The notes: generated by a model not told the origin, from the letters alone. A stretch of 64,000 nt of DNA from Malacoraja senta (GCA_038087875.1 CM075979.1:86242001-86306000), one strand, 5' to 3'; shown: positions 6,648-57,868, counted from the first letter of the stretch. Numbers and translations: made by a program.

Positions 6648-7233
6648 CAGGGGTCGGCAACCTTGTTCTGCGTAGGGGCCAGGACGCATGCCTGTGAGCA
6701 GATGGCGGGCCACTTCCATCACATGTACACATGGATCCCGCCCCCATCCCGAAAGGCAGGCACCAAAGCACGTGTTCACAGAGATCCCGCCCCTTCAAGG
6801 ACACCACCTGGAGCACTGGCTCCTAGTTATGGGCACTCACGAACACGGCGCACCTATGGACCATTGCCTTGGCTCTGTCCTGAAGGCGGTGGCTCAAATA
6901 CTCATACTCACTCGTCCCCGGCCTATTGACAACCCCGATCCGGACAGTGAAGCCCAGACACAGAAGGTGCGCGGCCGTGCTGGCGGCTTTGCGCAAGATG
7001 CGGTACAGCCAGAGCTCGGCCGTGCTCGGCGGCTCCGCCATTGCGGCCGCCAGTGCAGGCCTCCTTGCATTCTTGCGTCACTGTGCCTGGGCGCTGTGAC
7101 CTCTGGAGGTACCAGAGATGACGGAAGTCTGCAGGCCGGATGATTACGGAGAAAAAATATATATGCCTGCGGGCCAGATGATTTCGGGTTATGGGCCGCA
7201 TTTGGCCCGGGGGCCGTAGGTTGTCGACCCCTG
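6648..7233. mobile_element. Non-autonomous hAT (Charlie-like) element carrying host gene cargo
   Basis: 16-bp TIRs CAGGGGTCGGCAACCT / AGGTTGTCGACCCCTG (1 mismatch). Perfect 8-bp TSD ATTTAATG at 6640-6647 and 7234-7241. GGGCC subterminal repeats. Confidence 0.92.
6912..7041 (-). pseudogene. CYB561D2: Captured first coding exon of a cytochrome b561 domain-containing gene (CYB561D2-like), followed by its splice donor
   Basis: MAEPPSTAELWLYRILRKAASTAAHLLCLGFTVRIGVVNRPGT resembles the remembered CYB561D2 N-terminus ([32 protein letters not shown]). Kozak gcaATGg. Phase-1 donor A|GTGAGT at 6911-6906. Confidence 0.8.
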
Positions 7234-8916
7234 ATTTAATGGATCTATTAAAACACATGGCACACACTTCCTACGACAAATCGACCTCAGCAGCTGAAAT
7301 CCATCTATTTATCTATCTATATATCTAGTACTAAAACTCTCATCTTGTTTGTCTGTATGCGTGTTTGTGTATGTGATCCTGAAACTACGCCAAAACGATA
7401 CACGATAGCCCTACAATTTTAGCCCACCTTATTCACCACTGTCCTGTGGTGTGCTGTGGCATGTTTCATTCAGATTGATGGTATATTTTACAAGTTATTC
7501 ACATTTTAAACGTTACAAAAACCACTTTGACAACAATCACTTCTCTACTTGCCCTGCCTGTCAGCAGCGTTCATCACAATGACGTCACAATGGGATCCCA
7601 TATCTAATTTACATTAATAAAACGTGATTAAAAAAAAAAAACAGTTTTATTCAAATTCTTGGGGGGAGGTTTCATTTACAAAAAAAAAGCGCGATTTTCA
7701 CTGGGGGGGGGGGGTGGGGAGATAGGGGAGAGGTTTCATTTACAAAAAAAATTGTGATTTTCATTGTGGGGGGGTGGGATAGGGGGTAGGTGAGTGCTGA
7801 TGTCGCCCCCCCACGTGGGCCGATTGATTGGCTCTGAGATTGGCTCTAACAACCCACTCGACGCCCGATTGGTCCAATTTCCAAGTGGGGGAAGCGCCGA
7901 CACCGCTGCCAAACGTGGGGTCGTTTTGATTAGCCCCACCACCTCCCTCCCACTTGGGATCGTTTGATTGGCTCCGACCTCCAGCTCGACACCCGATTGG
8001 TCCGGGTCCCACATGGGGGAAGCGCAGCTTGACGCCCGATTGGTCGCAGTTCCGGATAAAAGCACGCTGGTTGTGCCCCGTGTCTTCTTCCTGTCGAGCT
8101 GCTACTGCTGCTGATTGATTGAGGGAATAAACTGCCAAATCGTTAAAGATAAGATTGATTTCATTTAAAAAAATGCAACTTTCATTGTGATGGATTTTAT
8201 TATTTAAAAAAAAATCTATTTAAATCAAATTTTTCCATGTTCATTAACTACTAACATTGTGTTTAGCTTCTTTTAACGAAAAAACGCTATTTTCATTTAG
8301 AGTTGCATTTTAAAAAAAAACATTGTGATTTTCATTGAGATTGATTTTATTCAAATATAAAAACTATATTTTGATCCAATTCTTTCGTGTTCATTGAGAA
8401 CTAACATCGTGTTTAGGTTATTTTGAAGTTTGATTTTATTATTTAAAAAAAAAAAAAATTCTCGACGCCCGATTGATCCAGGTACCACGTGGGGGGAGCG
8501 CTGACGCCACCCCCCAACGTGGGGTCGATTGATTGGTTCTGACCTCACGCTCGACGCCCTATTGGTCCGGGTCCCACGTGGGGGAAGTGCAGCTCGACGC
8601 CCGATTGGTTGCTGTTCCGGATAAAAGCACGCTGTTTGTCCCCCGGTCCTTCTTCCCGTCGAGCTGCTACTGCAGCTGATTGATTGAGGGGATAAACTGC
8701 TAAATCGTTAAAGGTAAGATTTATTTCATTTTAAAAATGCAATTTCCATTGCGATTGATTTTATTATTAAAAAAAAAAAATTTGAATCAAAATTTTCTGT
8801 GTTCATTAACTACTAACATTTTCAGTTAGAGTTGCATTTTTTTTTTAAATTGCGATTTTCATTGAGATTGATTTTATTCAAATGTAAAAACTATGTTTTG
8901 ATCCAATTCAAAATGT

Positions 8917-9165
8917 AGGGGAAAGGAGAGGGAGGGAGTGGAGGAGGAGAGGGGAAAGAAGAGGGAGGGTGAAGAGGAGGGGGAGGGAGTGCGGGGGGTG
9001 AGGGACAATGGAGGAGGATAGGGGTAGGAAGAGGAATGGCGAGGTATGGAGGAGGGGAGGGGGAAGAGAGGGGAGGGGGTGAGGGGAGGAAGCAGAGGAG
9101 GGTTGATGGATGGTGGGGAGTGGGAGGATAATGGAGGAGGGGAATAAGGGACTGAAGAGGGAGAG
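8917..9165. repeat. Purine-rich (GGA/GGG) low-complexity tract inside Helitron A
   Basis: Direct inspection; similar tracts at 11530-11920 (C-rich on +) and 12670-13100. Confidence 0.85.
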
Positions 9166-9195
9166 TGAAATGCGTTCACATTGATCTTATATTTT

Positions 9196-9996
9196 CAATT
9201 CAATTCAATTGCCCTTTATTGTAATTCAAACATGCAAGTTTTGAACTAAATTTCGTTCCTGCAGTCATAAGAGCAAAAAAAAAAAAACCAAAACACACAA
9301 TTAACACAATTCCACATAAACACCCATCACAGTGAATCTCCAAACACCTCCCACTGTGATTGAAGGCAAAAGTCTTATCTCTTCCCTGTCCTTTGTTCTT
9401 CTCCCGCGGTCAAGCAGGCAAACTGCAACGTCGAGGCGACCGGGGCTCCCGATGTTACAGCCCATGGCAGGCGATGGTAAGTCCCGCGACCGTTTAAGCC
9501 GCGCCGGGCGATGTAAGGCCCTGCTCTGGGCCGATTCAAACCCCTCGATTCGGGCGGGCGAAGTTGCCGTTGTGGGAGCTCCGAAAATCGGTCTCCCACC
9601 AGGGACCCGCGAGCTCCCGATTTTACCATTCACAGGGCCTGCGGCCGAAGCTCCGAAGTTGGGACACAGCCGCAGCGCCACCATAGCTCCGAAGTCAGCC
9701 AGCTCCACGATGGTAAGTCTGCAGGCTCTACGACTGGAGCCCTCAGGTCGATTCCGGTTGGAGGCCGCCAGATCCACGGTGTTAGGCCCAACGACAACGG
9801 GGACACGACAAGGAAAAGGTTGCGTCCCCATTCAGGGAAGAGATTAAAAAGTTTCCCCCACCCGCCCCCCGCCCCCCCCCACATATACACAGCTAAAAAT
9901 AAACCAAAAACATACTCCCAACAAAGACAAAAAGAAAGAAAAAAAGACAGACAGACTGCAGGGAGCCGCTGCCACAAGGCGCCGCCCCTCCACTCA
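9196..9996 (-). mobile_element. Non-autonomous GC-rich retroposon with LINE-like tail, nested in Helitron A
   Basis: Splits the Helitron motif attgatcttatattt|tttacaagttatt. (CAATT)n tail plus TTTATT. 5' and 3' ends homologous to 10268-11218. Confidence 0.65.
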
Positions 9997-10267
9997 TTTT
10001 ACAAGTTATTGCCATTTTAAACTTTAAAAACGACAGCCGCGCCTGCACAGTTGGGGGCTGTGGGTGAGTGGTGGAATAATGCGTTGCGGGAACGGGGCCC
10101 AATGGGTCCCACTTGGTCTAGTATATATCTATCTATATTTAAAACTGTGTGTGTGTGTTTCTGCCTGTCTTGTGGATGCCAGCCTTCCTTTGATTCGTTG
10201 CTACGCCAACACCACACGCAGAAACGCCGAGATTTTTTCCATTTCGGTTGAGATTTCACTTTCATTC

Positions 10268-11218
10268 GGCGCTGTCGTACAGCAGCGGCTCGCCTGCAGT
10301 CCGTCTGTTTTTACTTTTTTTGTTGTTTTATTTTGTCCTGTTTTAGTTAAATTTTAGTTTATTGGGTTGTGTATGTGTGGGGTGGGGGTGTGAAACATGA
10401 CTTTTGTCTCTTCCTTCGGGGGAATGCGACTTTTTCTTGTCGTATCCCCCTTCTCTGCCTCCGTCTGCGCTGAGGCCAAAATGGCGGAGCTGCCGGCCTC
10501 CAACTCCAACTGCGAGCGACCGACCGACCTCGAGGCTCTGGAGGCAGAGCCAGGACTTACCAGCGCGGGGCTGGCCAACTTCGGGGCTGCGGTGGCGTTC
10601 CGGCGGTGGCGACCGAGGACACTGGTGGTGACCTGAATCCGGAGGCTCGGCCGCAGCTGGCCCAGTGGACGACATCTTCGGGAGCGCGAGGCTGGCCAAC
10701 TTCGGGGCTGCGGTGGCGTTCCGGCGGTGGCGACCGAGGACACTGGTGGCGACCCGAGTCCGGAAGCTCATCCGTGGGCCCAGTGGACGACATCGTCGGG
10801 AGCGCGCAGGTCACAGGTTGGTGACCTGTTTTCTGGGGCTCCCGCAACTACAGCTGCGTCCGCTGGACTGGAGGGCGGCAGCTTCGGCAGCTTCGACCAC
10901 CCCGGGCCGCGGAGTTTGAGCCGGCCCGTCGCGGAGCACGGATTCGGCCGCGGGACTGGCTTACCGTCGCCCGGCAGGGTCACAGCATCAGAAGCCTGGA
11001 TCGCCTCAGCGCAGAGGGAGAACAAAGCGGGAAGAGACAGAGACTTTAAGACTTTTGCCTCCATCACAGTGAGGAGGTGCCTGGTGAACTCACTGTGGTG
11101 GATGTTAATTTGTGTTTATTGTGTGTTTTGTCATTTATTATTATATGTATGACTGCAGGCAACGAAATTTCGTTCAGACCGAAAGGTCTGAATGACAAAT
11201 AAAGGAATCTCTAATCTC
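10268..11218 (+). mobile_element. Non-autonomous GC-rich retroposon (same family as 9196-9996), nested in Helitron B
   Basis: Shared head (gcagcggctc..cctgcagtc), stem-loop CATCACAGTGA..TCACTGTGGTG, tail AACGAAATTTCGTT..TGACAAATAAA. Confidence 0.65.
10562..10806 (+). repeat. Tandem duplication, ~120-bp GC-rich unit (2 copies plus start of a third)
   Basis: AGCGCG unit starts at 10562, 10683 and 10801. Confidence 0.9.
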
Positions 11219-12170
11219 TAAACTCAAGTATCCACTCCTGATTAAATTTCGTCATGTTTATGTACACATTTTAAATAAAATCCTTCCCCCCCCCCCCCAA
11301 AATGTTTTTAAAAAACAGCTCTCACCCATAGAACATTCCATCGTGTGATGTCACAATGCCCAATGCTCACAGATGTCCAATCGGAATGGATCCATTTACA
11401 TATGCCTTTGCAGCAGCCCCAGCCCCTCCCTCCCACCCCCGCAGGCTGTGTCGAAGCGCGTCATCACGTGTGTGGGAATACAGAGAGGATTGGGGGTGAT
11501 AGGGAATGGAGAACAGATGGACTGTCCCTACCCCTCCCACTCTCCCTCCCCACTATTTCCCATCTCTTCCCCCCACTCCTCTCCCTCCACACTCTCCCCT
11601 CTCCCTCCCCTACCCCATCTCCCTCCTCCCTTCCCTCCCCCCCACCTCTCCCCCTCCCCATCCCTCTCTCCTCCCCCTCTCCATCTCCCTCTCCTCCTCC
11701 TCCCACCCCCATCGATCTCTCCCCCACCCCCCTTCCCTCCCCCACCCCCTCCCCTCTCTCCCCCACCCCCTTCCCCCTCCCCACTCCATCCAGTCTTCCC
11801 CCTCTACCCCCTACCCCTATCTCTGCTCTCTCTCTCTTTGATCTTTATCTTTTTCTCTGCCCTCTCTCTCTCTCTCTCTCTCTTCCACTGTCTGTGCACA
11901 CTCTCTCTGCCCCCCCCCTCTAGACGCACCTGAGAGGTGAGGGCTATTCATCAGTGCATAGGGTGGAGATGGGATAAAAGAAACCAATTAATAAAATTAA
12001 GATAATATCAAGGGGTGTGATGAGTGTGTGTGTTTGAGGGTGCCAGATTCCCACCCCGCAACCGTGCTTTGGAGGAACAGACCCAACGGGGGGTGGTTAG
12101 TGTGATGCCGCAGCCCCCCCTCGCAAATGCGCGTTGGGAAACAGACCCAACGGGTCTGCATTTGGTCTAG

Positions 12171-13246
12171 TATATTACTAAAACTCTCATCTTGTTTGTT
12201 TGTAGTATGCGTGCGTGTGCGCGATATTCCAAATCCCCGCCAAGACGGCACACAATAGCCCTATAATTCTTGGCCCACCTTACTCACCATTGTCCTGGGA
12301 AGTAAAATAAATAAGTTTCATTTGGATTGATGGTATGTTTTACAAGTTATTGATATTATAAACTTTACAAACATCACTTTTCAAACCACTTTTCCTCACG
12401 AATCTTATTTACATTAACAAAATTGCGATTTAAAAAAAAAAGCTTTAATCAAATTCTTCCGTTTTCATTCACAATGATGTCACAGTGGGATCCCAAATCT
12501 CATTTATATAAAAAATCCCGATTTTCAAAAAAAATGTTTTAATCAAATTCTTCCGTTTTCATTAACATTGTGTTTAGGTTATTTTAAAGAAAAAACATGA
12601 TTTTCATTGTTTGGGGGGGGGGATAGGAGGGAAGTTACATTTAAAAAAAACATCGTGATTTTCATTGTGGAGGTTGGGATAGGAGGGAGGTGAGGAGTGG
12701 TGGAGCAGGCGGATAGAGGGAGAGGAGGGGGTAGGGAGGGGAGAGGGAGGGGAAAGTGAGGGAGGTGAGGAAGGAGGGGGGATGGAGGGAGTGGAGGGGT
12801 GGAGTGGGGAATGTAGGGTGTGGTGGATAGAGGGAGAGGAGGGCAGTGGGGGAGGTGAGAAGGAGGAGTGGGTTGGGGGGAGTGGGGGAGCAGGGAGATA
12901 GAGGGAGAGATCGGGTGTAGGGAGGGGAGAGGGGTTATGGAGGGAGGGAGGGAGTGACTGTGGGTGGGGGAAAGGAGAGGGAGGGAGAGTTGAGGGAGTG
13001 GGGAAGGGAGGAGGAGAGGGGAAAGAAGAGGGAGGGTGAAGAGGAGGGGAGGGAGTGCTGGGGATGAGGGAATGGAGGACAGGGGTAGGGAAGAGGGATG
13101 GTGAGGCGCTGTTGGTGGAGGGCTGCCGTGACTCGCGTCACAACGGGGATCTCTGGCGTCACAACGGGAATCCGTCAGCCGCGCCTGCGCAGTTGGGGGC
13201 TATGGGTGAATGGTGGAATATTGCGTTAGGGGAACGGGTCTATTAG
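12171..13246 (+). mobile_element. Non-autonomous Helitron C (3' hairpin deleted)
   Basis: 5' TATATTACTAAAACTCTCATCTTGTTTG matches A and D. 3' subterminal CAGCCGCGCCTGCGCAGTTGGGGGCT..GGAAC matches A (10034-10093). Confidence 0.75.
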
Positions 13247-15703: not shown

Positions 15704-15903
15704 NNNNNNNNNNNNNNNNNNNNNNNNNNNNNNNNNNNNNNNNNNNNNNNNNNNNNNNNNNNNNNNNNNNNNNNNNNNNNNNNNNNNNNNNNNNNNNNNN
15801 NNNNNNNNNNNNNNNNNNNNNNNNNNNNNNNNNNNNNNNNNNNNNNNNNNNNNNNNNNNNNNNNNNNNNNNNNNNNNNNNNNNNNNNNNNNNNNNNNNNN
15901 NNN
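15704..15903. other. Assembly gap (200 N)
   Basis: Run of N. Confidence 1.
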
Positions 15904-17010
15904 GCAAGCTGATCACAAAAATGCTAGACCTTGGCCTCAGCAGTCAACTGTGTCGGTGGATATTGGACTTTCTCAGTGAACGCCCACAGACGGTGAGACT
16001 TGGACCCTACACCTCGACATCCCTGACCCTCAGCACAGGAGCACCGCAGGGCTGTGTGCTCAGTCCGCTCCTCTACGCCCTATACACACATGACTGCTTG
16101 CCCCATCACCCCGCAAATAGGATTTAAAAAATTGCGGACGATACAACCGTGGTTGGGCTCATCTCAAATGGGAACGAGGACGCCTATAGAGAGGAGGTGC
16201 ACAGACTTTCTGAGTGGTGTGCTCACAACAATCTCTCTCTGAACACTAAAAAGACAAAGGAGATCATCACTGATTTCAGGTGACATAGAGCGGAGCTCAG
16301 GCCACTGGAGATAGGGGGCGAGGAGGTGGAGAGGGTGCCTAGTTTTAAATTTCTGGGGATCAACATCAGTGAGGATCTTAAATGGTCTGTGAACTCTGCT
16401 GTAGTTGTAAAAAAGGCACAACAGAGACTTTACTTCCTCAGAACACTGAGGAAGGCCCATCTGTCTGCTAAACTGCTGGAGTCTTTCTACTGCTGTTCGG
16501 TAGAAAGCATACTGACTTACTGCATAACTGCCTGGTTTGGGAACTGTTCAGCAGCTGACAGAGCAGCTCTCCAGAGGGTGATAAAAACTGCCCAGGGTAT
16601 CATTGGACTCCCCCTGCCCCCTCTGGAGGACATTTACCACTCCAGATGCCGCAGCAGGACCTGTAATATCGTGAAAGACATTACACATCCTTGTCACCAC
16701 CTTTTCACACTGCTGCCCTCAGGAAAAAGGTACAGGTCGCTAAAGTCACGTACTGCCAGACTCAAGAACAGCTTTTACCCATCAGCAATCTTGGAACTGA
16801 ACTCTGTCTCGGGAGCGGATTATGGGGAAGGAGGGGGGGTGGGAGACAGTGTTAATTTATGTAAATGTGAATCCATGGGTGGGTTTGGGGAGTGAGGGAG
16901 TGTAAAAAGTATATGTGAATGTTTGAAGTTCTTTTAAATGGAGAGACACAGTAATCTCGTTGTATGTGACACATGCAATGACAATAAAGCATTCTGATTC
17001 TGATTCTGAT
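15904..17010 (+). mobile_element. Rex1/Babar LINE, RT C-terminal half with stops, truncated by the gap
   Basis: [43 protein letters not shown] plus (ATTCTG)n tail. Confidence 0.9.
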
Positions 17011-17014
17011 TCAA

Positions 17015-19559: not shown

Positions 19560-20000
19560 GGACACAACCTCGCCCCCTCCCTTGACGCACTCCGCACATC
19601 CTCTTATTCACCCTATTGTCCGAGTCACGTGCCGGCCCCAACGTGCTGGCGGCTCGTTCCGCGCAAAGTAGGAGGGATGAATAAACGCCAACCAACCGAA
19701 AAGCCCACGCTGCATGACGGGAATTGTAGTTCGCTTGGCTGTCTTGCGCCTGTCAAATTGCATTGCATCCCCCTTTCGTCCGTTGGAGGGTGTAAACTAC
19801 GTTCTCCATCTCCCTTCGCAGCCGGTGTCGCGCACGTGAGTTGACGCCTTGAGCTCGAGCGCTGAGCTTCTTGGTAGGTCTCAGTCAGTGAGTGGAAGAG
19901 AGCGCGTCCGCCATTTACAGTTGGGAAGAAAAGAGCGTGTGTGTTTCGGATCTGACAGACGGAATAAGCGCCCATCTTCTTGCCCTCCCCCCCCATCCCC
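19560..20000 (+). promoter_or_regulatory. WNK1: CpG-rich WNK1 promoter / TSS region
   Basis: Non-repetitive CpG-rich stretch ~1 kb upstream of the ATG. E-boxes GTCACGTG (19624-19631) and CACGTG (19833-19838), GC box ~19571, YY1-like CCGCCATTT (19908-19916). Confidence 0.75.
19712..19730 (-). promoter_or_regulatory. ZNF143 (SBS) binding motif
   Basis: Reverse complement ACTACAATTCCCGTCATGC is a close match to ACTACAnnTCCCAnnATGC. Confidence 0.8.
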
Positions 20001-20876
20001 CCTTCTCATGCGGGGGGCCCGGGCTCGAACTTATAACGAGGTGGAATATTGGCGATTTTCTTTTGTTGGAAAAATCAGTTCCATTGGAAGAGAAGAAGCC
20101 GGGATGTTTCGTATGTGGAAGGGACTGCAGTGAGAGCCTCTCCCCGGGCAGCTTGAGCTTGCCCTGTGGTTTCTATTGTTGCTCCCAGGCCTGTCTTGAT
20201 TGGCAGTGCGGGCTGTCCTTTCTCATCACCATCATTTGTTGACTTTTTAAGAAAAGCTTAATATTTTCATCGCATCCATCTTGAAAGCTGTGGAACCAGA
20301 GCCTTTACGGACATTGACGGAACAGTTGTGGCGCTGTACATCATCGATGTTTAAAAAAAAAGTGACTCCACATATTCACTGTTCTGCTATTGAGAGAACT
20401 ATCGCCACATCGTTGTAAAACGGATTGTTACTTTGAATGTGCTGTTTGGGTAACGAATATTCATTTTTGGAGTTTAAATCGAGGGAAAAGGGAGCTGTTT
20501 AGGCTGCTGACATTGACTTTTCCATTTTTAATTCCTTTGCCCTCCCGAGAAATTAAGACTGAATGAAAGCAGTTTGGGATTTTTAAATCAAGGATGGATG
20601 GATCACATCAGATGGTCCATGTTTATCACGCTGCATTGCAACTGACTGAGGTGGACAGTATTTTTTGTTTCTTTTTTAAAGGAACGTCTGTGTTCCAGGG
20701 ATCCGACCCTTTGCACATAAATAGCATGGAGTTATTTTGTATTTAAAAACTATCGGTTTGCAATTGTCTCCTCGTGGTTAACTAAAAAAATTGCATATCC
20801 TTTGAAATCTTGTTTTAGAGAGGAACCACTACATTTTGTTTTTTGAAGCCGATTGCCAATCGGTTTTCTTGTGGCA

Positions 20877-21692
20877 ATGTCAGAAAGCGCAGACAAAATT
20901 GGCTCATTATTGCGTCCTCCTAAAAATGGTACCAATTCCAGTTCGGATACTACAATAGGAGAACGTTTTGGAGTAAGTATGAGAAAAAAGGAAGAGTTCA
21001 CCGCCCTCAGGAGGCGGAGGCATACAATGGACAAGGATAGCAAAGCAGATCACCAACGTTTTATTAGGAGGAGTGTGATCTGCGATTCCAACGTAACCGC
21101 ATTGGACCATTTACCCAGTAAAACCAGCATTATCGTCTCTCCGCCTGAATCGGATAATGCAACCATATTAATAAGTAATGTTACCAATAATAATGAAGCA
21201 CAGCCTCCAATACAAGCAACTCCCGTTGACCCAGTCTCTACTGCAGTTCCTGTGATTAGAGAAGAAAAATGCGAAAATTGCACCGATGGCAGTGCGAAAG
21301 ATGGAAGCAGGGTCGCGGGTATTGGCGATGAACCATCTCGGCCCTCTATCCGTTCGCCCGATGTCTATGTTTGCAATTATGCCGTAAGTACAACTGGCGG
21401 CATCCTTGTCAGCAAAGACCGAAAAAAACAAAAAGCTGTTCCAATTAAAGAGGAGGTCGAGTCGAAAGTCAATGAAGAGGACAGTGCGGAGAATCGTGAG
21501 GCAGAGGAGGCAAGAAATCTAGAGAGAAAAGCGCAGGAGGATAATGAAGAAATAGAGACAAAGGCTGTGGCAACTTCCCCTGATGGGAGGTTTTTGAAGT
21601 TCGACATAGAAATTGGGAGAGGATCGTTCAAAACTGTCTATAAGGGTCTCGACACGGAAACAACTGTGGAAGTAGCTTGGTGTGAATTGCAG
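20877..21692 (+). CDS. WNK1: WNK1 coding exon 1 (N-terminus and kinase subdomains I-II)
   Basis: gcaATGtca start. [19 protein letters not shown] (Akt site) and [12 protein letters not shown] are WNK1 N-terminal motifs. GRGSFKTVY (catalytic Lys in subdomain I) and VAWCELQ (Cys replacing the usual Lys). Donor CAG|GTAAGC, phase 0. Confidence 0.96.
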
Positions 21693-22676
21693 GTAAGCTT
21701 CGATGCTTAAATCGGAGGTCCAATTTGGAATAATGAAGATCCTTCTTTTCCGAGTTACATCAGCACTGACAAGAAAACCTTTCAGTACCAAAGACATTGT
21801 CAATTTTTATTACAGACCTTGGTCTGATTGACAACGCTGCTTGTCACTGAAGCAGTTTGAAAAATAGAAAGTTTGACAATTTTCTACATGTACATTTATT
21901 TAAAAGACTAATTGCTTTACTTTTTCCTTGCTTTCATTTCTGCCTTATCTTGCCCAGATTTGCATTTAAGTAAAGGCCTTCTTTATTTCTTAGTTTGTGA
22001 ACATTGGTAGTTTTGTCCATGGCTGACATATTAATATTAGATGAGTTAAAAAGAGAATTCTAATGAGAATTGCCAAGCTCTCGGCTGAATTGTGAGTCTC
22101 TTGCACCACATTGATTTGTAGTGTTGAGGTTTTTGGACTTGCTACCACCCCCATTACCAAAATTAGTTAGTGTGGGACAAAATAGATACTGAATTGGGGA
22201 CCTTCATAAGTTGATTCTTTGCATTATTATTTTTTGTGGTGTCTAAGATGTTTGGTCTTCAGTAATCATTTCTGATCACTGATTAATTGTTGTACACCGC
22301 TATTATTATCCTAGAGCTTGGGGTGAATGTGTGGATTGTCTGCTTCTTTGTGCCCTGTAAGGTCACACAATTAACAGAGAGAGAATGGGCAGATGAAGTG
22401 TTTTATTTATTTTAGTTGAGGGATAGATACCTAGAACAACTCCAGAGATATGGGCCTTAATCTAAGAATCATGTCTTGGGATCTCTTCAGACAGGCATGA
22501 ATGTAACAACATTTTATTAGGCTTATCTCATGTAATGATCGGTTGAAAAATGCCTTCAATTATATGTGGGGATCACTGAACTTGTTTTCTGTTTAACTTA
22601 TTCACGGGTGCAGGATAGAGAAAATATATACAGCAACAATTGGGGTTAAGAGGAGGGTATTGATCAGCAGCATGGA

Positions 22677-26600: not shown

Positions 26601-26613
26601 TATATATACATGG

Positions 26614-26649
<36 letters not shown>

Positions 26650-28434: not shown

Positions 28435-29410
28435 GTATCGCATAGCTGGTAGAGCTGCTACCTCCGTGCCAGAGACCCGGGTTTGATCCTGACCTTGGGT
28501 GCTGTCTCTGTGGAATTTACATGTTCTTCCTGTGACCCTGTGAATTTCCTCCGGGTGCTCCGGTGTCCTCCTAGATCCCAAAGACATGCAGATTTATAAG
28601 TTAACTAGACCAAGCGCAGACCCGTTGGGTCTCGTTCCCCCAATGCAATATTCCACCAAACTGCGCATGCGCGGCTGACGGACCCGCACTGCGCAGGCAC
28701 GACTGCCGCGTTCAAAGTTGTGCCGTTGACGGCAGAAATTAAGTTAGAGTTAATAAAGTGAATAGAGGACCCGTGGAGGCGTTTGTAAAATAGAACAAAA
28801 CGTACCCAAGATGAGGCCAGCCAAGTACACGTGGAAAAAAAAAATGGCGATCTGAAAATCGGCAAAGGCCCCAACTGCGCACGAGCGGATACCGGGCCCA
28901 CTGCACACGCGCGGGGAGACGCCGTCATTTTGCGTCACTGCCCTGTCACTGGCGCCATTTTCAATTGTGATGCGGCTGACTGGCCTCCCTCAACAGCGCA
29001 GGCGCGGCCGGCAAGTGGGGGCGCTGTATAAAGTTAATTTAAGTTTTAAGTCTCAATAACTTGTAAAATATAACATCAATCTGAATGAAACTTGGCTAAT
29101 GCACATCGCAGGACAATGGTGAGTAAGGTTGGCCTAAAATTGTAGTGCTATCGTGTACTGTTTTTGCGGAGTTTCGGGAACAAATATATATACAAACAAA
29201 CAAGATGAGTTTTGGTAATAAAATAATAATTATTATAATTATATATATAATAGATAGATTGGCTTCTGTAAATTAGGAACTGCAGGATAGGAACGATTTA
29301 GAGGAATATGGGCTAAATGCGGGTAGTTGGAACAAATGTAGGTGGGGCATCTTGGTCGGCATGGATAAGTTCGGCCGAAGGGCCGGTTTCTGTGCTGCAT
29401 GGCTCTAACT
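28435..29410 (+). mobile_element. V-SINE (HE1-like) split by Helitron D
   Basis: A/B-box head at 28440-28490. SINE sequence ..aagttaa|ttggct.. is interrupted at 28604/29259. Confidence 0.75.
28605..29258 (-). mobile_element. Non-autonomous Helitron D (654 bp, intact termini)
   Basis: Minus strand reads A|TCTATCTA...AGACCC-AAC-GGGTCT hairpin...CTAG|T. Inserted between A and T with no TSD. Confidence 0.92.
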
Positions 29411-30759: not shown

Positions 30760-32422
30760 CAGTGCCCTCCATAATGTTTGGGACAAAGTCCCATCATTTA
30801 TTTATTTGCCTCTGTACTCCATAATTTGACATTTGTAATAGGAAAAAAAATCACATGTGGTTAAAGTTCACATTGTCAGATTTTATTAAAGGGTATTTTT
30901 ATACATTTTGGTTTCGCCATGTAGAAATTACAACTATGTTTATACATAGTCCCCCCATTTCAGGGCACCATAATGTTTGGGACACATGGCTTCACGGTGT
31001 TTGTAATTGTTCAGGTGTGGTTAAATGCATAATTTTGGTTAATAATATAAGAGAGCTCTCAGCAACCCATCTTTCCTCCAGTCTTTCCATCACCTTTGGA
31101 AACTTTTATTGCTGTTTATCAACATGAGAACCAAAGTTGTGTCAATGAAAGTCAAAGAAGCTATTATGAGACTGAGAAACAAGAATAAAACGGTTAGAGA
31201 CATCAGCCAAACCTTAGGCTTACCAAAATCAACTGTTTGGAACATCATTAAGAAGAAAGAGAGCACTGGTGAGCTTACTAATCGCAAAGTCTATTGTCTA
31301 TTGAAAGGGACTGGCAGGCCAAGGAAGACCTGCACAGCTGATGACAGAAGAATTCTCTCTATTATAAAGAAAAAATCCCAAACACCGGTCTGACAGATCA
31401 GAAGCACACTTCAGGAGTCAGGTGTGGATTTGTCAATGACCACAGAAGGATTCATGAACAGAAATACAGAGGCTACACTGCAAGATGCAAACCACTGGTT
31501 AGCCGGAAAAAATAGGATGGCCAGGTTACAGTTTGCCAAGATGTACTTAAAAGAGCAACCACAGTTCTGGAAAAAGATCTTGTGGACAGATGAGATGAAG
31601 ATTAACATATCAGAGTGATGGCAAGAACAAAGTATGGAGGAGAGACGGAACTGCCCAAGATCCAAAGCATACCACCTTATCTGTGAAACATGGTGGTGGG
31701 GCTGTTATGGCCTGGGCATGTATGGCTGCTGAAGGTACTGGCTCACTTATCTTCATTGATGAAACAACTGCTGGTGGTAGTGGCATAATGAATTCTGAAG
31801 TGTATAGACACATCCTATCTGCTCAAGTTCAAATAAATGCCTCAAAACACATTGGCTCGTGGTTCTTTCTACAGCTAGACAATGATCCCAAACATACTGC
31901 TAAAGCAACAAGGTAATTTTTCAAAACTAAAAAATAATAAATTTTTGAGTGGCCAAGTCAATCACCCGATCTGAACCCAATTGGGCATGCCTTTTATATG
32001 CTGAAGAGAAATCTGAAGGGGACTGGCCCCCAAAACAAGCATAAGCCAAAGATGGTTATAATACAGGCCTGGCAGAGCATCACCAGAGAAGACACCCAGC
32101 AACTGGTGATGTCCATGAATCGCAGACTTCAAGCAGTCATTGCATGCAAATGATATGCAACAAAATACTAAACATGACTACTTTCGTTTACATGACATTG
32201 TTGTGTCCCAAACATTATGGTGCCCTGAAATGGGGGGGACTGTATATAAACACTGCTGTAATTTCTACATGGTGAAACGAAAATGTATAAAAACGGCTTT
32301 TATTAAAATCTGACAATGTGCACTTTAACCACATGTGATTTTTTTTCTATTACAAATCTCAAATTGTGGAGTGCAGAGGCAAATAAATAAATGATGGGTC
32401 TGTCCCAAACATTATGGCACTG
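30760..32422 (+). mobile_element. Tc1 (Passport-like, IR/DR-type) transposon, full length, transposase disrupted
   Basis: ~220-bp TIRs starting CAGTGCCCTCCATAATGTTTGGGACA with internal direct repeat. ILWTDE, KHGGG, DNDPKH, WPSQSPDLNPI motifs. TA after the right end. Confidence 0.92.
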
Positions 32423-35789: not shown

Positions 35790-36325
35790 ATGTGAGCTTA
35801 TTTAATGGTATGGCAACTGTTCTGCCCAAGACTGCAAGCAATTGCAGAGAGTTTTCAATGCAGCACAGTCCACCTCGCAAACAAGCCTTCAAACTTCCCC
35901 TCCCCCATCCTCATCAACTCTATCTATGCTTCATGCTGCCTCGGACAACTTGCAGCCTGGTCATTCTCTTTTCCTCCTCTTTCCTGTCAGGTAAAATATA
36001 CAAAAAGTTGAAAGCATGTGTCATAAGACTCAAGAACACCTTATTTTACCATCACTATCGGACTTGAACGAATCTCTCCTATAATCGGGATGAATTTGTA
36101 ATCTACTATCCATACATTTGTAGTTACGCTTACTTTGTATCAGCAACACTATATTCTGCACTTTGTTTATTTTTTCTTTTGCACTACCTGATATCCTTGT
36201 GTATGATATGATTTAGAAAAATAGGTGCAGGAGTAGGCCATTCGGCTCTTCGAGCCAGCACCGTCTGACTAGCATGCAAAACAAAGTATGGTGTATCTGG
36301 GTACAAGTGGCAACCAATACCAAAT
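35790..36325 (+). mobile_element. Decayed Rex1 3' fragment with a short CR1 tail inserted (36213-36263)
   Basis: Homologous to 2030-2470. Confidence 0.6.
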
Positions 36326-37678
36326 CCTCCTCCTTCTTAACCAATATCAAATTGATAATTTTCAAGAGGCAGTTGTGAATGGTGAGATAAGTGACAGATA
36401 GTCCAATAATGCTTGTGTCAGGGGTGCAGCAGCAGCTAGCAAGTGATGGACAGATCCAGGTGAGGAGTGGGTGGGCAGAAGTTTGTATAAATACTATGAT
36501 CAGTGTCCAGAACCTTTGTTTCAAGTTGTGGCCTGGTATGAACTTTTCTGATAGAAAAATACATTTTTGCTCCTTGTGATTCCAGTGTGAATAACGCTGC
36601 TTGTGATATTCAATGCAAGTAGTTTGCAGGGGCCACGGAGCTTTTTTACAAGTGGGGGGAGGGTGTGGGAGGGGGTGATCCCCTCCCATGGTAGGGACTT
36701 TATTAAATTTGATGTATTAAAATCATGTTTTAGTGCATTGTAGAAGTATGATTTCAATGTTTTTTGTTTGAAGTAATTTTAAGATAATGTAGGGCCTGCA
36801 TGGGAGATATGAGTAGGTGATTATTATTTTTGTTATTGCTTGACCTCCAAAAACTGGGGGATAATAATACAGGCCATCCCCCACCTCAAAAGTGGGGGGA
36901 TATATCCCCCTCCCCCCCACTCCGTCCGGATCGACGCCAGTGCCTTCCACGGTACAGAAACATTGACAAAACAATTTTTTTATGTGTTATAAAGTGTTTT
37001 TTTGTTTTTTAGTTGGAAAAAGGGACAAGAAATAATCATAACATTTCCTGATTTTGCAGTCATACAAATTATGTTTTGCTCGGGGGAAAAATCGGAGTAT
37101 TTTGAAAGTATGCGTTCTCCTTTTGACGTACATTTCATTTGATATGAATTTAGAATCATCAAACCATGACAATAAAGGGGGTATATGTTTGTGGAAACAT
37201 TACTTTTTTATTTTGTTAAATAAACGTTAATTTTCGAGAAATCTAAAATGCATTAGAAATATACATTTCAATGCACTGAGTCTCTTGCCCAGAGTAGGTG
37301 AATTGAGGACCAGAGGAAAGATTTAAGATGAAGGGGAAAAGATTTCATAGGAATCTGAAGGGTAACTTTTTCCACACAAAGCGTGGTGGGTGTATGGAAC
37401 AAGCTGCCAGATGAGGTAGTTGAGGCAGGGACTATCCCAATGCTTGACTGTTAGACTGATGCATGGATAGGACAGGTTTGGATGGATATGGACCAAAAGC
37501 AGGTAGTGTAGCTGGGACATGTTGGCGGGTGTGGGCAAGTTGGGCCGAAGGGCCCGTTTTCACACTGTATCACTCTGTGACTACATTATACCTCCACCAT
37601 GCATGAATGCATGAATGCTTCAAAATCAAGTGGTCAAGTTTTATTGGGCAAGAGTGACCATAATATGGTTGAGTTCTT

Positions 37679-37856
37679 ATATTTAAGAGGGAGTTAGATG
37701 TGGCCCTTGTGGCTAAAGGGATCAGGGGGTATGGAGAGAAGGCAGGTACGGGATACTGAGTTGGATGATCAGCCATGATCATATTGAATGGCGGTGCAGG
37801 CTCGAAGGGCCGAATGGCCTACTCCTGCACCTATTTTCTATGTTTCTATGTTTCTA
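37679..37856 (+). mobile_element. Short CR1 3' end fused head-to-tail to the long CR1
   Basis: Near-identical to 40502-40679. Confidence 0.9.
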
Positions 37857-40680
37857 TTAGGATGGAGAGTGACATTGTTAATTCAGAAACAATGGTTCTG
37901 AACTTAAGGAAAGGTAACTTTGAGGGTATGAGACGTGAATTGGCCAAGATTGACTGGCAATTAATTCTAAAAGGGTTGACGGTGGATATGCAATGGAAGA
38001 CATTTAAAGACTGCATGGATGAACTACAAAAATTGTTCATCCCAGTTTGGCAAAAGAATAAATCAGGGAAGGTAGTGCATCCGTGGATAACAAGGGAAAT
38101 CAGGGATAGTGTCAAAGAGAAGGATGATGCGTACAAATTAGCCAGAAAAAGCAGCATACCGGAGGACTGGGAGAAATTCAGAGACCAGCAGAGGAGGACA
38201 AAGGGCTTAATTAGGAAAGGAAAAATAGATTATGAAAGAAAACTGGCAGGGAACATAAAAACTGACTGCAAAAGTTTTTATAGATATGTGAAAAGAAAGA
38301 GCTTAGTTAAAACAAATGTAGGTCCCTTGCAGTCAGAAACAGGTGAGTTGATCATGGGGAACAAGGATATGGCGGACCAATTGAATAACTACTTTGGTTC
38401 CGTCTTCACTAAGGAAGACATAAATAATCTGCCGGAAATAGCAGGGGACCGCGGGTTAAAGGAGTTGGAGGAATTGAGTGAAATCCAGGTTAGTCGGGAA
38501 GTGGTGTTGGGTAAATTGAATGGATTATTATTATTATTTTTTTAATTTGTATTTTATTAGAAGTGCATTACATTACAACCACATACATTAGTACTTGTCA
38601 TTTATATCTTCTTACAATTAATGTACTCCATTTATTTTTTACACTAGAAAAGGAAAAGATTGAAAGAAAGAAGAAAGTGAAGGAAAAAGTGGAAGTGTAG
38701 GAAATGTGACAACAAAAAAGGACAAAGACCCTATAAGAGCAAAATTAAAAACAAAAGAAAAAGAGTTAAGAAATAGACCCTAGGAAAAAAAGAAAGAGAG
38801 AAAGAGGAAAAAGAGAGAAACAAATATTTTTATGAGCATTATGCAAAATGGACATTCCAACTCTTCAACTATCATCCCCCCCTTACCTGACCTCAATTTT
38901 TATTTTTTTAATTTTTTATTTTTAAAGTACTTTTGCACCTTATGTTTGTAATAATTCTATAAATGCAGACCACGTCAAGTGGAAGTGATCTGGTTTACCT
39001 GCTAGGAGGAGTCTTATCTCTTCTAGGTATAATGTTTCAAACATATTTGAAATCCACATATTTATAGTTGGAAATTGAATGGATTAAAGGCCGATAAATC
39101 CCCAGGGCCAGATAGGCTGCATCCCAGAGTACTTAAGGAAGTAGCTCCAGAAATAGTGGATGCATTAGTAATAATCTTTCAAAACTCTTTAGATTCTGGA
39201 GTAGTTCCTGAGGATTGGCAGGTAGCAAACGTAACCCCACTTTTTAAGGAGGGAGAGAGAAAACGGGGAATTACAGACCAGTTAGTCTAACATTGGTACT
39301 GGGGAAACTGCTAGAGTCAGTTATTAAAGATGGGATAGCAGCACATTTGGAAAGCGGTGAAATCATTGGACAAAGTCAGCATGGATTTACAAAAGGTAAA
39401 TCATGTCTGACGAATCTTATAGAATTTTTCGAGGATGTAACTAGCAGCGTGGATAGGGGAGAACCAGTGGATGTGGTGTATCTGGACTTCCAGAAGGCTT
39501 TCGACAAGGTCCCACATAAGAGATTAGTATACAAACTTAAAGCACATGGCATTGGGGGTTCAGTATTGATGTGGATAGAGAACTGGCTGGCAAACAGGAA
39601 GCAAAGAGTAGGAGTAAACGGGTCCTTTTCACAATGGCAGGCAGTGACTAGTGGGGTACTGCAAGGCTCAGTGCTGGGACCCCAGCTATTTACAATATAT
39701 ATTAATGACCTGGATGAGGGAATTGAAGGCAATATCTCCAAGTTTGCGGATGACACTAAGCTGGGGGGCAGTGTTAGCTGTGAGGAGGATGCTAGGAGAC
39801 TGCAAGGTGACTTGGATAGGCTGGGTGAGTGGGAAAATGTTTGGCAGATGCAGTATAATGTGGATAAATGGGAGGTTATCCATTTTGGTGGCCAAAACAG
39901 GAAAGCAGACTATTATCTAAATGGTGGCCGACTAGGAAAAGGGGAGATGCAGCGAGACCTGGGTGTCATGGTACACCAGTCATTGAAAGTAGGCATGCAG
40001 GTGCAGCAGGCAGTGAAGAAAGCGAATGGTATGTTAGCTTTCATAGCAAAAGGATTTGAGTATAGGAGCAGGGAGGTTTTACTGCAGTTGTACGGGGTCT
40101 TGGTGAGACCACACCTGGAGTATTGCGTACAGTTTTGGTCTCCAAATCTGAGGAAGGACATTATTGCCATAGAGGGAGTGCAGAGAAGGTTCACCAGACT
40201 GATTCCTGGGATGTCAGGACTGTCTTATGAAGAAAGACTGGATAGACTTGGTTTATACTCTCTAGAATTTAGGAGATTGAGAGGTGATCTTATAGAAACT
40301 TACAAAATTCTTAAGGGGTTGGACAGGCTAGATGCAGGAAGATTGCTCCCGATGTTGGGGAAGTCCAGGACAAGGGGTCACAGCTTAAGGATAAGGGGGA
40401 AATCCTTTAAAACCGAGATGAGAAGAACTTTTTTCACACAGAGAGTGGTGAATCTCTGGAACTCTCTGCCACAGAGGGTAGTTGAGGCCAGTTCATTGGC
40501 TATATTTAAGAGGGAGTTAGATGTGGCCCTTGTGGCTAAGGGGATCAGAGGGTATGGAGAGAAGGCAGGTACGGGATACTGAGTTGGATGATCAGCCATG
40601 ATCATATTGAATGGCGGTGCAGGCTCGAAGGGCCGAGTGGCCTACTCCTGCACCTAATTTCTATGTTTCTATGTTTCTAT
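37857..40680 (+). mobile_element. Young 5'-truncated CR1 LINE (ORF2 tether plus RT), interrupted by an L1 fragment and one frameshift
   Basis: ORFs 37775-38545, 39075-39290 and 39293-40582 (429 aa: YLDFQKAFDKV, QGSVLGP, FADD). (CTATGTTT)n tail. Confidence 0.96.
38528..39071 (-). mobile_element. L1-clade LINE 3' fragment nested in CR1
   Basis: 15-bp TSD AAATTGAATGGATTA at 38513-38527 and 39072-39086. Minus strand PTIKMWISNMFETLYLEEIR..TWSAFIELL resembles fish L1 ORF2 C-terminus. A/TAA tail. Confidence 0.8.
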
Positions 40681-40695
40681 TGCCATATACTCAAG

Positions 40696-41027
40696 CATAG
40701 AAAATAGGTGCAGGAATTTCCCATTCGGCCCTTCGAGCCAGCACTGCCATTCAATATGATCATGGCTGTTTGTCTAAAATCAGTACCCCTTTCCTGTTTT
40801 TTCCCCATATTCCTTGATTTTGATAGCCCCAAGAGCTAAATGTAACTCTCTCTTGAAAACATCCAGTGAATTGGCCACTGCCTTCTGTGGCAGAGAATTC
40901 CACAGATTCACAATTCTCTGGGTGAAGAAATGTTGTCCTCATCTCTGTCCTAAATGGTCTACCCCTTATTCTTAAACTGTGACCCCTGGTTCTGGACTCC
41001 TCCAACATCGGGAACATTTTTCCTGCA
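40696..41027 (-). mobile_element. CR1 3' fragment, tail-to-tail with the long CR1
   Basis: AGKMFPMLEESRTRGHSLRIRGRPFRTEMR. Confidence 0.88.
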
Positions 41028-41132
41028 GTTACAGTAAGTGAAAATCTAGCAGGCAAGCAGGATGCTTTCTCCAACCACCCCCATTTGAAGGCCACTATCT
41101 TCCACCGCTTCTACCCAGTGCTTGCTACCTAC

Positions 41133-41363
41133 TTCCAGCAGCCACTGGTTGTCCTCCAGGATGCACCGAGCCGCAGCCTGGTCCATGCCGATCACCGGAG
41201 CGAATTCTGCGCGGAGACTCTGACGGCAGCGACGCAACGCTTCCGACGTCCCGGGACTCTTGCACTGAGGCTGCTCTATGGCCGGAACTGCAGCGAGCGA
41301 CTCGCTAGCCCGGCAAACACTCGCCAGCCCCGGCTCCCCGTCCGCCGTTGCTTCTGCTTCTAT
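41133..41363 (-). pseudogene. TDP2: Captured TDP2 (TTRAP) exon 1, UBA-like N-terminal segment, with splice donor; start codon apparently ATG>ATA
   Basis: RQSLRAEFAPVIGMDQAAARCILEDNQWLLE resembles remembered human TDP2 RRLLCVEFASVASCDAAVAQCFLAENDWEME. Phase-0 donor GAA|GTAGGT at 41132-41127. Frame open from ATA at 41363 (IEAEATADGEPG..). CpG-rich. Confidence 0.78.
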
Positions 41364-41959
41364 CCCTCCCTCCGCCCCGGCTCTCCAACACCCATGACCA
41401 GGTTACTCGGAGCACAGCGGCGCTTCGTCCAAAGCCGGAAACGTTGAAACGTGTCTAGCCAAAAAAGTGGGGGGGGCTGCAGCCCTCCCCCAGTTCCGCG
41501 GCCCACGGTTTGTTAGCTAATATAATTTCCTTTTGAGGTATTTCAATGTGTTTGTCTTTTAGGATATTATCGGGCATATTTATGTTTATCGGAGAGGGTG
41601 GGTTGTGTATTTGGTACAAAGGAGAGGGCCTTGATGTTATCTGCAGGTTTTTTTTATTTGACAAATCTGTGCCCTTGCTCTTCGGGCACAATGAGGACTT
41701 GGTGTATGTGAAACAGCTGTAAAGGGCAATATGCTTTCTGGCGATTACAAAGCATGCTTTTCAAATTTATTTAAGAAATAATATGCAAAAATTTGATATT
41801 TGCCAAGAATCAACATTAAACAAATAAATACTGTCTGAAGAAGTTTGTTTAGTTTATTGTCACGTGTACCAAGGTATAGTGAAAAACTTTTGTTGCATGC
41901 TAACCAGTTAGCAGATAGACAATACATGATTACAATCGATCCATTTACAGTGTATAGGT

Positions 41960-57800: not shown

Positions 57801-57868
57801 CTTTAACCACATGTGATTTTTTTCTATTACAAATTTCAAATTGTGGAGTACAGAGGCAAATAAATAAA

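What the first reader, a model, noticed from the sequence alone, without database searches (positions are those of the whole stretch)
6648..41507. Recurrent theme: DNA transposons mobilising CpG-island promoter + first exon + splice-donor modules
Seen: within 35 kb there are two TIR elements with recognisable first exons (CYB561D2-like, TDP2-like) and two Helitrons with promoter/donor-like cargo. Inference: such density suggests a genome-wide system in this lineage in which non-autonomous DNA elements preferentially pick up open-chromatin 5' gene ends. This would yield portable promoter-exon cassettes that can splice into neighbouring genes or make antisense RNA. I know of no description of this in chondrichthyans but cannot verify novelty.
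Basis: inference. Interest (0 to 1): 0.85.

Follow-up and report, generated by a model that had tools for sequence, protein, structure and literature searches.

The report
Transposons carrying borrowed first exons
Around the WNK1 gene of a cartilaginous fish, two mobile-DNA families each carry a copied first exon of another gene (CYB561D2-like, TDP2-like), a known kind of gene-fragment capture. Their clustering here comes from spread of a few old captures and does not by itself show a special genome-wide capture system.

Summary
Partly confirmed.

(1) 6648-7233 is a real hAT-like MITE. It has a 16-bp TIR (15/16 matches) and a perfect 8-bp TSD. On its minus strand it carries a CYB561D2-like first exon with an intact GTGAGT donor. 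The same MITE with the same cargo sits at another site, with a different TSD, in a public transcript contig.

(2) The TDP2-like exon is real: its best solved relative is the TDP2 UBA domain. The proposed 4.9-kb TIR element (36627-41507) is not supported. The exon belongs to a ~700-bp module: 5'UTR, exon 1, donor, ~100 bp of intron and a LINE 3' tail. This module recurs at 86-91% identity at three other loci in public contigs. Unchecked scan notes report it at many other places in this genome. What moves it is unresolved: a TIR element or LINE-tail retroposition.

(3) Four Helitron-like non-autonomous copies are real. Their "promoter/donor cargo" rests only on CpG richness and short motifs, and no gene origin was found.

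The assembly gap lies outside all of these elements.

The local density reflects spread of a few capture events. A bias towards first exons is suggested: other scan notes in this genome report ING1, BCL7A and HTRA2 first exons against one internal fragment. That bias is untested. The principle is already known from bat Helitrons, plant Pack-MULEs and animal Pack-TIRs. This scan had already found such captures elsewhere in the same genome.

The parts
6640..6647 (.). Left copy of the 8-bp target-site duplication ATTTAATG of E1
   Evidence: Direct reading
6648..7233 (.). E1: 586-bp non-autonomous hAT-like MITE (Pack-type). 16-bp TIRs match at 15/16. GC 0.61, CpG o/e 0.74.
   Evidence: A second insertion with its own TSD is at L003:332-904.
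6912..7041 (-). CYB561D2-like first coding exon (Met to ...RPGT/S), followed by a GTGAGT donor at 6911-6906
7234..7241 (.). Right copy of the TSD ATTTAATG
7304..10121 (+). Helitron-like copy A: 5' TCTAT after A, and a 3' hairpin plus CTAG followed by T. It holds an internal duplicated CCAAT-rich block (7942-8382 / 8507-8909).
10128..12170 (+). Helitron-like copy B. Its 5' end is divergent; its 3' end has the hairpin plus CTAG.
12171..13246 (+). Helitron-like copy C. The 5' tip is missing, the 3' hairpin is deleted, and the end is degenerate (TTAG).
28605..29258 (-). Helitron-like copy D: a complete 654-bp element in WNK1 intron 1, inserted at AA|TT. Its cargo at 28700-29030 has CpG o/e 1.14.
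20853..21705 (+). WNK1 exon 1 coding part. This is the host gene, with its own CpG island at 19501-20300. Exon 2 is at about 43030-43203.
37676..40680 (+). 5'-truncated LINE (RVT_1) preceded by a 181-bp copy of its own tail (98% identical). It is a separate retro-insertion and gives no support to a 4.9-kb TIR element.
40696..41029 (-). LINE 3' tail that forms the 3' part of the TDP2 module. It ends at the canonical LINE terminus at 40696.
41030..41394 (-). TDP2-like 5' part of the module: a short leader, the former ATG (now ATA, 41363-41361), the UBA-like exon, a GTAGGT donor at 41132-41127, and about 100 bp of intron-like sequence
41395..41507 (-). Upstream piece shared with L004 (to at least 41474) but not with L001, L002 or L005. 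Its nature is unresolved: transposon end or TDP2 leader.
36627..36942 (.). Its relation to 41507 is weak.

Best explanation
The window holds copies of a few old repeat families that carry gene fragments and had already spread. They sit upstream of WNK1 and inside its first intron.

E1 is a Pack-type hAT-like MITE. A non-autonomous hAT element acquired about 450 bp of the 5' end of a CYB561D2-type gene at the DNA level: leader, first coding exon, donor and the start of intron 1. A hAT transposase supplied in trans then moved it to several sites.

The TDP2-like exon is part of a ~700-bp composite module: leader, exon 1, donor, ~100 bp of intron and a LINE 3' tail. This module was copied as one block many times. 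Some copies are bounded on the left by a DNA-transposon-like terminus. The window copy ends exactly at the LINE terminus.

The Helitron-like elements are ordinary non-autonomous copies of one family, with CpG-rich internal sequence of unknown origin.

The captured exons are passengers that decay neutrally. In this window they are antisense to WNK1 and have no demonstrated function.

Shown: element ends, TSDs, homology of the exons, multiple loci, decay.
Inferred: the capture mechanism, the mover of the TDP2 module, and any promoter activity.
For: - E1 ends: TIR and TSD.
- Cargo homology to CYB561D2.
- The true gene of a shark lies beside NPRL2, not WNK1.
- A second full E1 copy has intact TIRs and a different TSD (ATCTAGAC/ATCTAGAA). 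It lies in the 3'UTR of a SMARCA2/4-like mRNA contig. A partial third copy is in L001.
- TDP2: the UBA domain is the sole PDB hit, with UBA_4 hits.
- The exon, intron piece and LINE tail are collinear at 86-91% in L001, L002/L005 and L004.
- The left boundary CAGRGCTGCCAAC is followed upstream by unrelated flanks in L001 and L005.
- The module ends at the LINE terminus at 40696.
- Decay: ATG changed to ATA twice in the window copy, a stop in L004, and an 11-nt deletion in the L003 copy.
- Helitron features.
- 17 scan notes on TDP2-like exons in this genome (unchecked).
Against: - No copy of the TDP2 module could be followed through both ends, so its carrier is not established.
- The parent CYB561D2 and TDP2 genes of this species were not available. 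Capture boundaries relative to the parents, and the presence of real promoter DNA, are therefore untested.
- High CpG o/e (0.57-1.16 against a background of 0.42) in copies 10-20% diverged is not what methylated junk usually shows. It leaves room for CpG-island-like behaviour.
- Other notes of this scan list several more first-exon captures, which could mean a real bias rather than chance.
Confidence: 0.7

Rival explanations
1. This lineage has a systematic mechanism by which non-autonomous DNA transposons (TIR elements and Helitrons) preferentially acquire open-chromatin 5' gene ends. The result is portable promoter-exon-donor cassettes that act on neighbouring genes.
For: - Both identifiable coding captures in the window are first exons with intact donors.
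- All the elements are CpG-island-like in composition.
- Other notes in the same genome report ING1, BCL7A and HTRA2 first exons against one internal fragment.
- Published precedent for 5' and GC bias exists (PMC4224331, PMC8277862, PMC5861414).
Against: - Density in the window is explained by family amplification.
- The Helitron cargo has no traceable gene origin.
- The module shared by TDP2 copies holds almost no upstream DNA.
- The copies decay.
- In the mRNA contigs the donors are read through, not spliced.
- Ascertainment favours first exons, because an ATG in a CpG-rich patch is easy to recognise.
Confidence: 0.2
2. The TDP2 module is primarily a LINE-dependent retroposon. A transcript starting at the TDP2 start site ran through exon 1 into intron 1 and ended in a sense-oriented LINE 3' tail. 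The LINE reverse transcriptase recognised that tail and copied the RNA to new sites. DNA transposons that hold the module got it second-hand. This route would by itself select for first exons plus the start of intron 1.
For: - The tail has the same orientation as the exon and is complete to the canonical LINE 3' terminus, where the window copy ends.
- All copies share one 5' limit, at window position 41394.
- The LINE family is recently active nearby, with a 98% identical tail duplication.
- Scan note s1-198013 describes a 658-letter TDP2 exon fused to a CR1 tail, and s1-200014 describes a BCL7A exon carried by a retroelement-type unit (unchecked).
- Tail-dependent mobilisation of foreign RNAs by stringent LINEs is established knowledge (my recollection of the eel UnaL2 experiments; not looked up here).
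Against: - No TSD was found around the window copy.
- The two upstream contexts are each shared by two loci.
- The L-type context starts at a CAG terminus with subterminal repeats typical of DNA transposons, at two independent sites. This points to DNA transposition for at least that subfamily.
- One rearrangement could also explain the common 5' limit.
Confidence: 0.35
3. E2 as drawn by the first reader: one 4.9-kb TIR transposon (36627-41507) that captured TDP2 exon 1 and was later invaded by LINEs.
For: - The two tips share the pattern C-GGGCC-CGGA-C followed by a G-run.
- The 41420-41520 end resembles the inner end of the small unit at 36850-36975 (0 of 300 shuffles reach the score).
- The LINE at 37676-40680 is clearly a later insertion.
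Against: - The tip-to-tip alignment is not significant (23 of 300 shuffles).
- The first three bases differ (CAG against CGT).
- There is no 8-bp TSD; only GTTTG is shared.
- 36627-36942 looks like a self-contained small unit.
- No other copy shows 36627-37675-like sequence.
Confidence: 0.15

Closest known systems
Multicopy Pack-TIRs of animals, e.g. Pack-hAT-N8_XT carrying the CAPSL 5'UTR in Xenopus tropicalis (Tan et al. 2021, PMC8277862)
   Same: - Non-autonomous hAT-type element with TIRs and 8-bp TSDs.
- A few hundred bp of GC-rich host 5'-end sequence inside.
- Copies at several sites with distinct TSDs.
   Different: - The host here is a cartilaginous fish, and neither 'shark', 'cartilaginous' nor 'Callorhinchus' occurs in that paper's main text.
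- The cargo includes a coding first exon plus its donor.
- That survey found only four multicopy cases among 370 Pack-TIRs, so E1 would be a further rare example.
[quoted passage not shown] 2014, PMC4224331)
   Same: - A first exon plus the start of intron 1, amplified as a passenger to many copies.
- A reported excess of 5' gene ends among captures.
   Different: - In this window the Helitron-like copies carry no identifiable gene fragment.
- The exon carriers are a hAT-like MITE and an unresolved module, not Helitrons.
Pack-MULEs of rice (PMC5861414, and Jiang et al. 2011 as cited there)
   Same: Preferential duplication of GC-rich gene pieces by non-autonomous TIR elements, with a local rise in GC at insertion sites.
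   Different: A different superfamily and kingdom. The thousands of independent captures seen in rice are not shown here.
SINE-like non-autonomous retroposons that borrow a LINE 3' tail
   Same: The TDP2 module ends in a complete LINE 3' tail in sense orientation, and it recurs as a block of about 700 bp.
   Different: - The head is a Pol II gene 5' end with a coding exon and donor, not a Pol III-type RNA gene.
- Retroposition is not demonstrated: there are no TSDs, and part of the family has DNA-transposon-like termini.

Membership tests
hAT-type non-autonomous element / Pack-TIR (E1) | Short terminal inverted repeats | tested here: met
   16 bp with 15/16 complementary at 6648 and 7233. The same TIRs occur in L003.
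hAT-type non-autonomous element / Pack-TIR (E1) | 8-bp target-site duplication | tested here: met
   ATTTAATG/ATTTAATG in the window. ATCTAGAC/ATCTAGAA in L003.
hAT-type non-autonomous element / Pack-TIR (E1) | Internal sequence copied from a host gene that resides elsewhere | tested here: met
   CYB561D2 N-terminus at E 1.5e-6. tblastn finds exon 1 only. The true shark gene neighbours NPRL2. The parent gene of this species was not available.
hAT-type non-autonomous element / Pack-TIR (E1) | Transposition after capture (same cargo at sites with different TSDs) | tested here: met
   L003/L006 copy at 78-88% identity in a SMARCA2/4-like 3'UTR. Partial copy at L001:515-660.
hAT-type non-autonomous element / Pack-TIR (E1) | Matching autonomous hAT transposase partner | not testable with these tools
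   The window holds no hAT transposase, and the genome cannot be searched.
Pack-TIR (E2 as proposed, 36627-41507) | Terminal inverted repeats | tested here: not met
   23 of 300 shuffles reach the alignment score, and the tips differ in their first bases.
Pack-TIR (E2 as proposed, 36627-41507) | Target-site duplication | tested here: not met
   GTAGTTTG against GTTTGTTA; only 5 bases are shared.
Pack-TIR (TDP2 module, any carrier) | Defined transposon terminus shared by copies with unrelated flanks | tested here: inconclusive
   The left terminus CAGRGCTGCCAAC with subterminal repeats is shared by L001 and L005, and their flanks differ. No right end was seen, because the contigs stop in the LINE tail.
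Helitron (non-autonomous) | 5' TC and 3' CTRR termini, no TIRs | tested here: met
   TCTAT... at 7304, 10128 and 29258(-). CTAG at 10121, 12170 and 28605(-). Copy C is degenerate.
Helitron (non-autonomous) | Hairpin about 10-12 nt upstream of the 3' end | tested here: met
   6-7-bp stems with a 3-nt loop at the same place in A, B and D. The z-scores are modest (-0.0 to -2.6), so the case rests on conserved position.
Helitron (non-autonomous) | Insertion between A and T without a TSD | tested here: met
   D is flanked by ...CAA| and |TTAAC. A has A before its 5' end. T follows each CTAG.
Helitron (non-autonomous) | Rep/helicase-encoding partner | not testable with these tools
   None is in the window.
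Gene-capturing Helitron | Cargo traceable to a host gene | tested here: not met
   No Pfam match for the cargo ORFs and no Rfam or tRNA match. Non-coding origin could not be searched.
LINE-tail-dependent retroposon | 3' end identical to the partner LINE's 3' terminus | tested here: met
   The tail runs to the canonical terminus at 40696, next to unrelated spacer.
LINE-tail-dependent retroposon | Copies with unrelated flanks on both sides, often 5'-truncated | tested here: inconclusive
   The upstream contexts fall into two shared types. Downstream flanks are unseen except in the window.

The most novel reading that the evidence does not exclude
In this skate-like genome, first-exon cassettes arise mainly by LINE-tail-driven retroposition of transcripts that run from a gene's start site into a sense-oriented LINE tail in intron 1. 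This route inherently selects 5'UTR plus exon 1 plus donor. DNA transposons then pick up these modules second-hand. Together the two steps give a family of perhaps hundreds of portable TDP2 UBA-exon and donor units, plus similar units from other genes.
Probability: 0.3. Interest if true: 0.65.

Novelty: new member of a known kind. Interest (0 to 1): 0.42.

Why it matters
Multicopy gene-fragment-carrying TIR transposons are rare in animals: four were found among 370 Pack-TIRs in a 100-genome survey. A verified hAT-type case with a coding first exon and donor, and a much more abundant TDP2 exon-1 module, would extend exon-shuffling raw material to cartilaginous fishes.

If the LINE-tail route is right, it offers a simple mechanistic reason why first exons dominate such captures.

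Practically, these modules are a hazard for gene annotation. They can produce spurious TDP2 or CYB561D2 first exons, and they appear inside the 3'UTRs of real mRNAs.

Tried and rejected
- **Real genes at this locus?** Rejected. Only exon 1 of CYB561D2 is present, and it is enclosed by a TIR and TSD. The TDP2 copy has lost its ATG and recurs elsewhere.
- **Uninformative searches.** Pfam and the Atlas on the 72-aa CYB ORF gave nothing useful. The antisense TDP2 ORF search gave nothing. The scan of JGI metagenome contigs with the TDP2 profile found no true relative.
- **Chiloscyllium CYB561D2 locus.** Fetching the DNA failed because the gene range was too long. The exon boundary was therefore judged from genomic ORFs of other species.
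- **P0004.** The top hit of the representative search is a low-complexity serine-rich bee protein and was discarded.
- **Helitron cargo.** Pfam, Rfam and tRNA searches were all blank. TRF did not resolve the CCAAT-rich sub-repeats.
- **CpG-rich patch at 57.9-59.7 kb as another capture.** Rejected. It reads as a Penelope-like element with RT and GIY-YIG-like motifs, sitting between Tc1-like repeats.
- **Right end of the TDP2 carrier.** It could not be defined, because every public contig stops in the LINE tail.


Full report
**Context.** The window is vertebrate DNA: GC 0.41, CpG o/e 0.42. It holds the 5' part of WNK1.
- Exon 1 coding sequence lies at 20853-21705. Its end matches WNK1 kinase structures at E 3.7e-26.
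- The gene has its own CpG island at 19501-20300.
- Exons 2-4 lie at about 43.0, 47.2 and 48.4 kb.
- The finding's places therefore lie upstream of WNK1 (E1 and the Helitron stack) and inside intron 1 (Helitron D and the TDP2-like unit).

**Assembly gap.** The gap at 15704-15903 lies between the Helitron stack and the WNK1 promoter, inside none of the elements. Its right flank begins in the middle of a decayed LINE reverse transcriptase. Continuity cannot be shown, and I did not try to fill it. Only the statement "within 35 kb" depends on the gap.

**E1 (6648-7233).**
- *Ends.* The tips are 16-bp inverted repeats matching at 15/16, flanked by a perfect 8-bp duplication ATTTAATG. This is the hAT pattern.
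- *Cargo.* The minus-strand ORF from 7041 starts with Met and matches the N-termini of CYB561D1/D2 proteins in an exhaustive search of 1.84 billion representatives.
- *Best hit.* The best true hit is annotated CYB561D2 isoform X4 of the shark Chiloscyllium punctatum, at E 1.5e-6 and 54% identity.
- *Donor.* Similarity stops at ...RPGT(S), where a GTGAGT donor sits (6911-6906). Three genomic CYB561D1-type ORFs from other fishes lose similarity at the same point.
- *Not the real gene.* Only exon 1 is present in the window. The real shark gene lies beside NPRL2.
- *Second copy.* A second full copy has intact TIRs and a different TSD (ATCTAGAC/ATCTAGAA). It is 78-88% identical, carries the same cargo and has an 11-nt frameshifting deletion. 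It lies in two near-identical Logan contigs (L003, L006).
- *Context of that copy.* Those contigs carry an uninterrupted SMARCA2/4-like ORF of more than 1,300 residues, so they are spliced mRNA with the MITE in the 3'UTR.
- *Third copy.* A third, internally deleted copy is in L001.
- *Verdict.* E1 is a genuine Pack-type hAT MITE that moved after capture.

**E2: the exon.**
- The TDP2-like exon is real. The minus-strand ORF 41402-41049 hits only the human TDP2 UBA domain among PDB sequences, at E 0.0064. A four-sequence profile gives 8.9e-5.
- Pfam and the Atlas both point to UBA_4.
- The window copy has ATA where the other copies have ATG, at two positions. It is a dead copy.

**E2: the proposed 4.9-kb TIR element.** It is not supported.
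- The tip alignment is reached by 23 of 300 shuffles, and there is no 8-bp TSD.
- The interval is a mosaic: a small G-run-rich unit (36627-36942); another retroelement tail (about 37290-37650); a LINE preceded by a 98% identical copy of its own 181-bp tail (37676-40680); a 15-nt spacer; then the TDP2 unit.

**What the TDP2 unit is.**
- *Other loci.* Public contigs L001, L002/L005 and L004 are 86-91% identical to the window across one collinear block. The block is a short leader, exon 1, a GTAGGT/GTAAGT donor, about 100 bp of intron-like sequence, and a LINE 3' tail in the same orientation.
- *Block duplication.* Across the block as a whole, the window and L001 are more alike (88%) than this LINE tail is to the other LINE tails in the window (about 77-81%). 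The block was therefore copied as one piece.
- *5' limit.* All copies share one 5' limit, at window position 41394.
- *W-type context.* Upstream of that limit, the window and L004 share at least 80 bp.
- *L-type context.* L001 and L002/L005 share a different 145 bp that starts at CAGRGCTGCCAAC and is full of short subterminal repeats. Beyond it, the flanks of L001 and L005 are unrelated. That is a true mobile-element terminus of DNA-transposon type.
- *3' limit.* The window copy ends exactly at the canonical LINE terminus (40696).
- *Expression context.* L005 is a TMEM181 mRNA contig with the module in its 3'UTR, read through the donor.
- *Scan notes (unchecked).* 17 notes in this genome mention TDP2-like exons at many places. 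One describes a 658-letter "exon fused to a CR1 3' tail".
- *Verdict.* This is a spread module. I rate its mover as unresolved between a TIR element and LINE-tail retroposition, possibly with second-hand pickup by transposons.

**Helitrons.**
- Copies A, C and D share about 220 bp at the 5' end.
- A, B and D share a 3' end with a 6-7-bp hairpin 11-12 nt before CTAG, followed by T. The 5' TCTAT tips follow an A.
- D is a clean 654-bp insertion at AA|TT.
- The "promoter plus non-coding first exon" cassette in A is a duplicated block with six ATTGG boxes, an E-box and a GTAAG. D's cargo has GCGCATGCGC-type palindromes, but similar ones belong to the family's own conserved 3' region.
- No Pfam, Rfam or tRNA match was found. 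The cargo claim therefore remains at motif level.

**The general claim.**
- CpG-island-like composition of all these elements is real: o/e 0.57-1.16 against 0.42.
- The density in this window follows from the spread of a few families, not from frequent capture.
- Two of two coding captures here are first exons. Other notes of this scan in the same genome add ING1, BCL7A and HTRA2 first exons and one internal amine-oxidase fragment (partly followed up by others, not by me).
- This hints at a 5' bias. However, counts are per note rather than per event, and first exons are the easiest to recognise.

**Comparison with what is known.**
- Bat Helitrons show an excess of promoters, 5'UTRs and first exons, and amplified the NUBPL exon 1 to about a thousand copies (PMC4224331).
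- Animal Pack-TIRs are mostly hAT, and 13% of them capture exons. Only four of 370 are multicopy, and those favour GC-rich DNA (PMC8277862).
- Pack-MULEs duplicate GC-rich gene pieces (PMC5861414).
- I found no paper describing this in cartilaginous fishes.

**Verdict.** This is a new member of a known kind. The LINE-tail route for the TDP2 module is the most interesting open possibility.

Noticed in passing
window 9213-9399 and 11019-11205: A 199-bp inverted repeat (75% identity) brackets a 2-kb CpG-rich stretch. That stretch contains the junction between Helitron-like copies A and B (10121/10128). Either a foldback-type element was split by Helitron ends or the 'two Helitrons' parse is incomplete.
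   Followed up: partly
window 37678-37858 and 40501-40681: The LINE at 37859-40680 is preceded by a 98% identical 181-bp copy of its own 3' tail. This fits a template switch to a second LINE RNA during one insertion event.
   Followed up: partly
L003:332-904 and L006 (Logan SRR2097078, SRR2097062): The E1-family MITE with the CYB561D2-like exon lies in sense orientation in the 3'UTR of a spliced SMARCA2/4-like mRNA contig. The donor is read through.
   Followed up: partly
L005:3740-4274 and L002 (Logan SRR8090270, SRR24105903): The TDP2 module with its CAG-type left terminus lies in the 3'UTR of a TMEM181 mRNA contig (ORF with GOLD and WLS-like TM domains). Both contigs break at the start of the LINE tail.
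   Followed up: partly
window 56303-62990: Tc1-like inverted repeats (52 nt, 98% complementary, at 56308/59992) and Tc1 HTH ORFs surround a CpG-rich Penelope-like element at about 57.9-59.7 kb, which has RT and GIY-YIG-like motifs. This is nested transposons, not a gene capture.
   Followed up: partly
window 30787-32401: A decayed Tc1/mariner copy with inverted ends (63-115 nt, 89-92%) and an ORF matching the Sleeping Beauty-type HTH domain.
   Followed up: no
window 8915-9180, 11530-11890, 12680-13100: Long purine-rich (GGGAGG-type) low-complexity arrays, with their complement, sit inside the Helitron-like copies. They are related to each other at about 70-85% identity.
   Followed up: no
window 15904-16895: The right flank of the assembly gap starts inside a decayed LINE reverse transcriptase, whose C-terminal part matches Pfam ALKBH8_N. 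The 5' part of that LINE is presumably in the gap.
   Followed up: partly
window 6648-7233, 28605-29258, 40696-41394 and copies in L001-L005: CpG o/e stays at 0.57-1.16 in repeat copies that are 10-20% diverged, against a window background of 0.42. This is unusual for methylated vertebrate repeats.
   Followed up: partly
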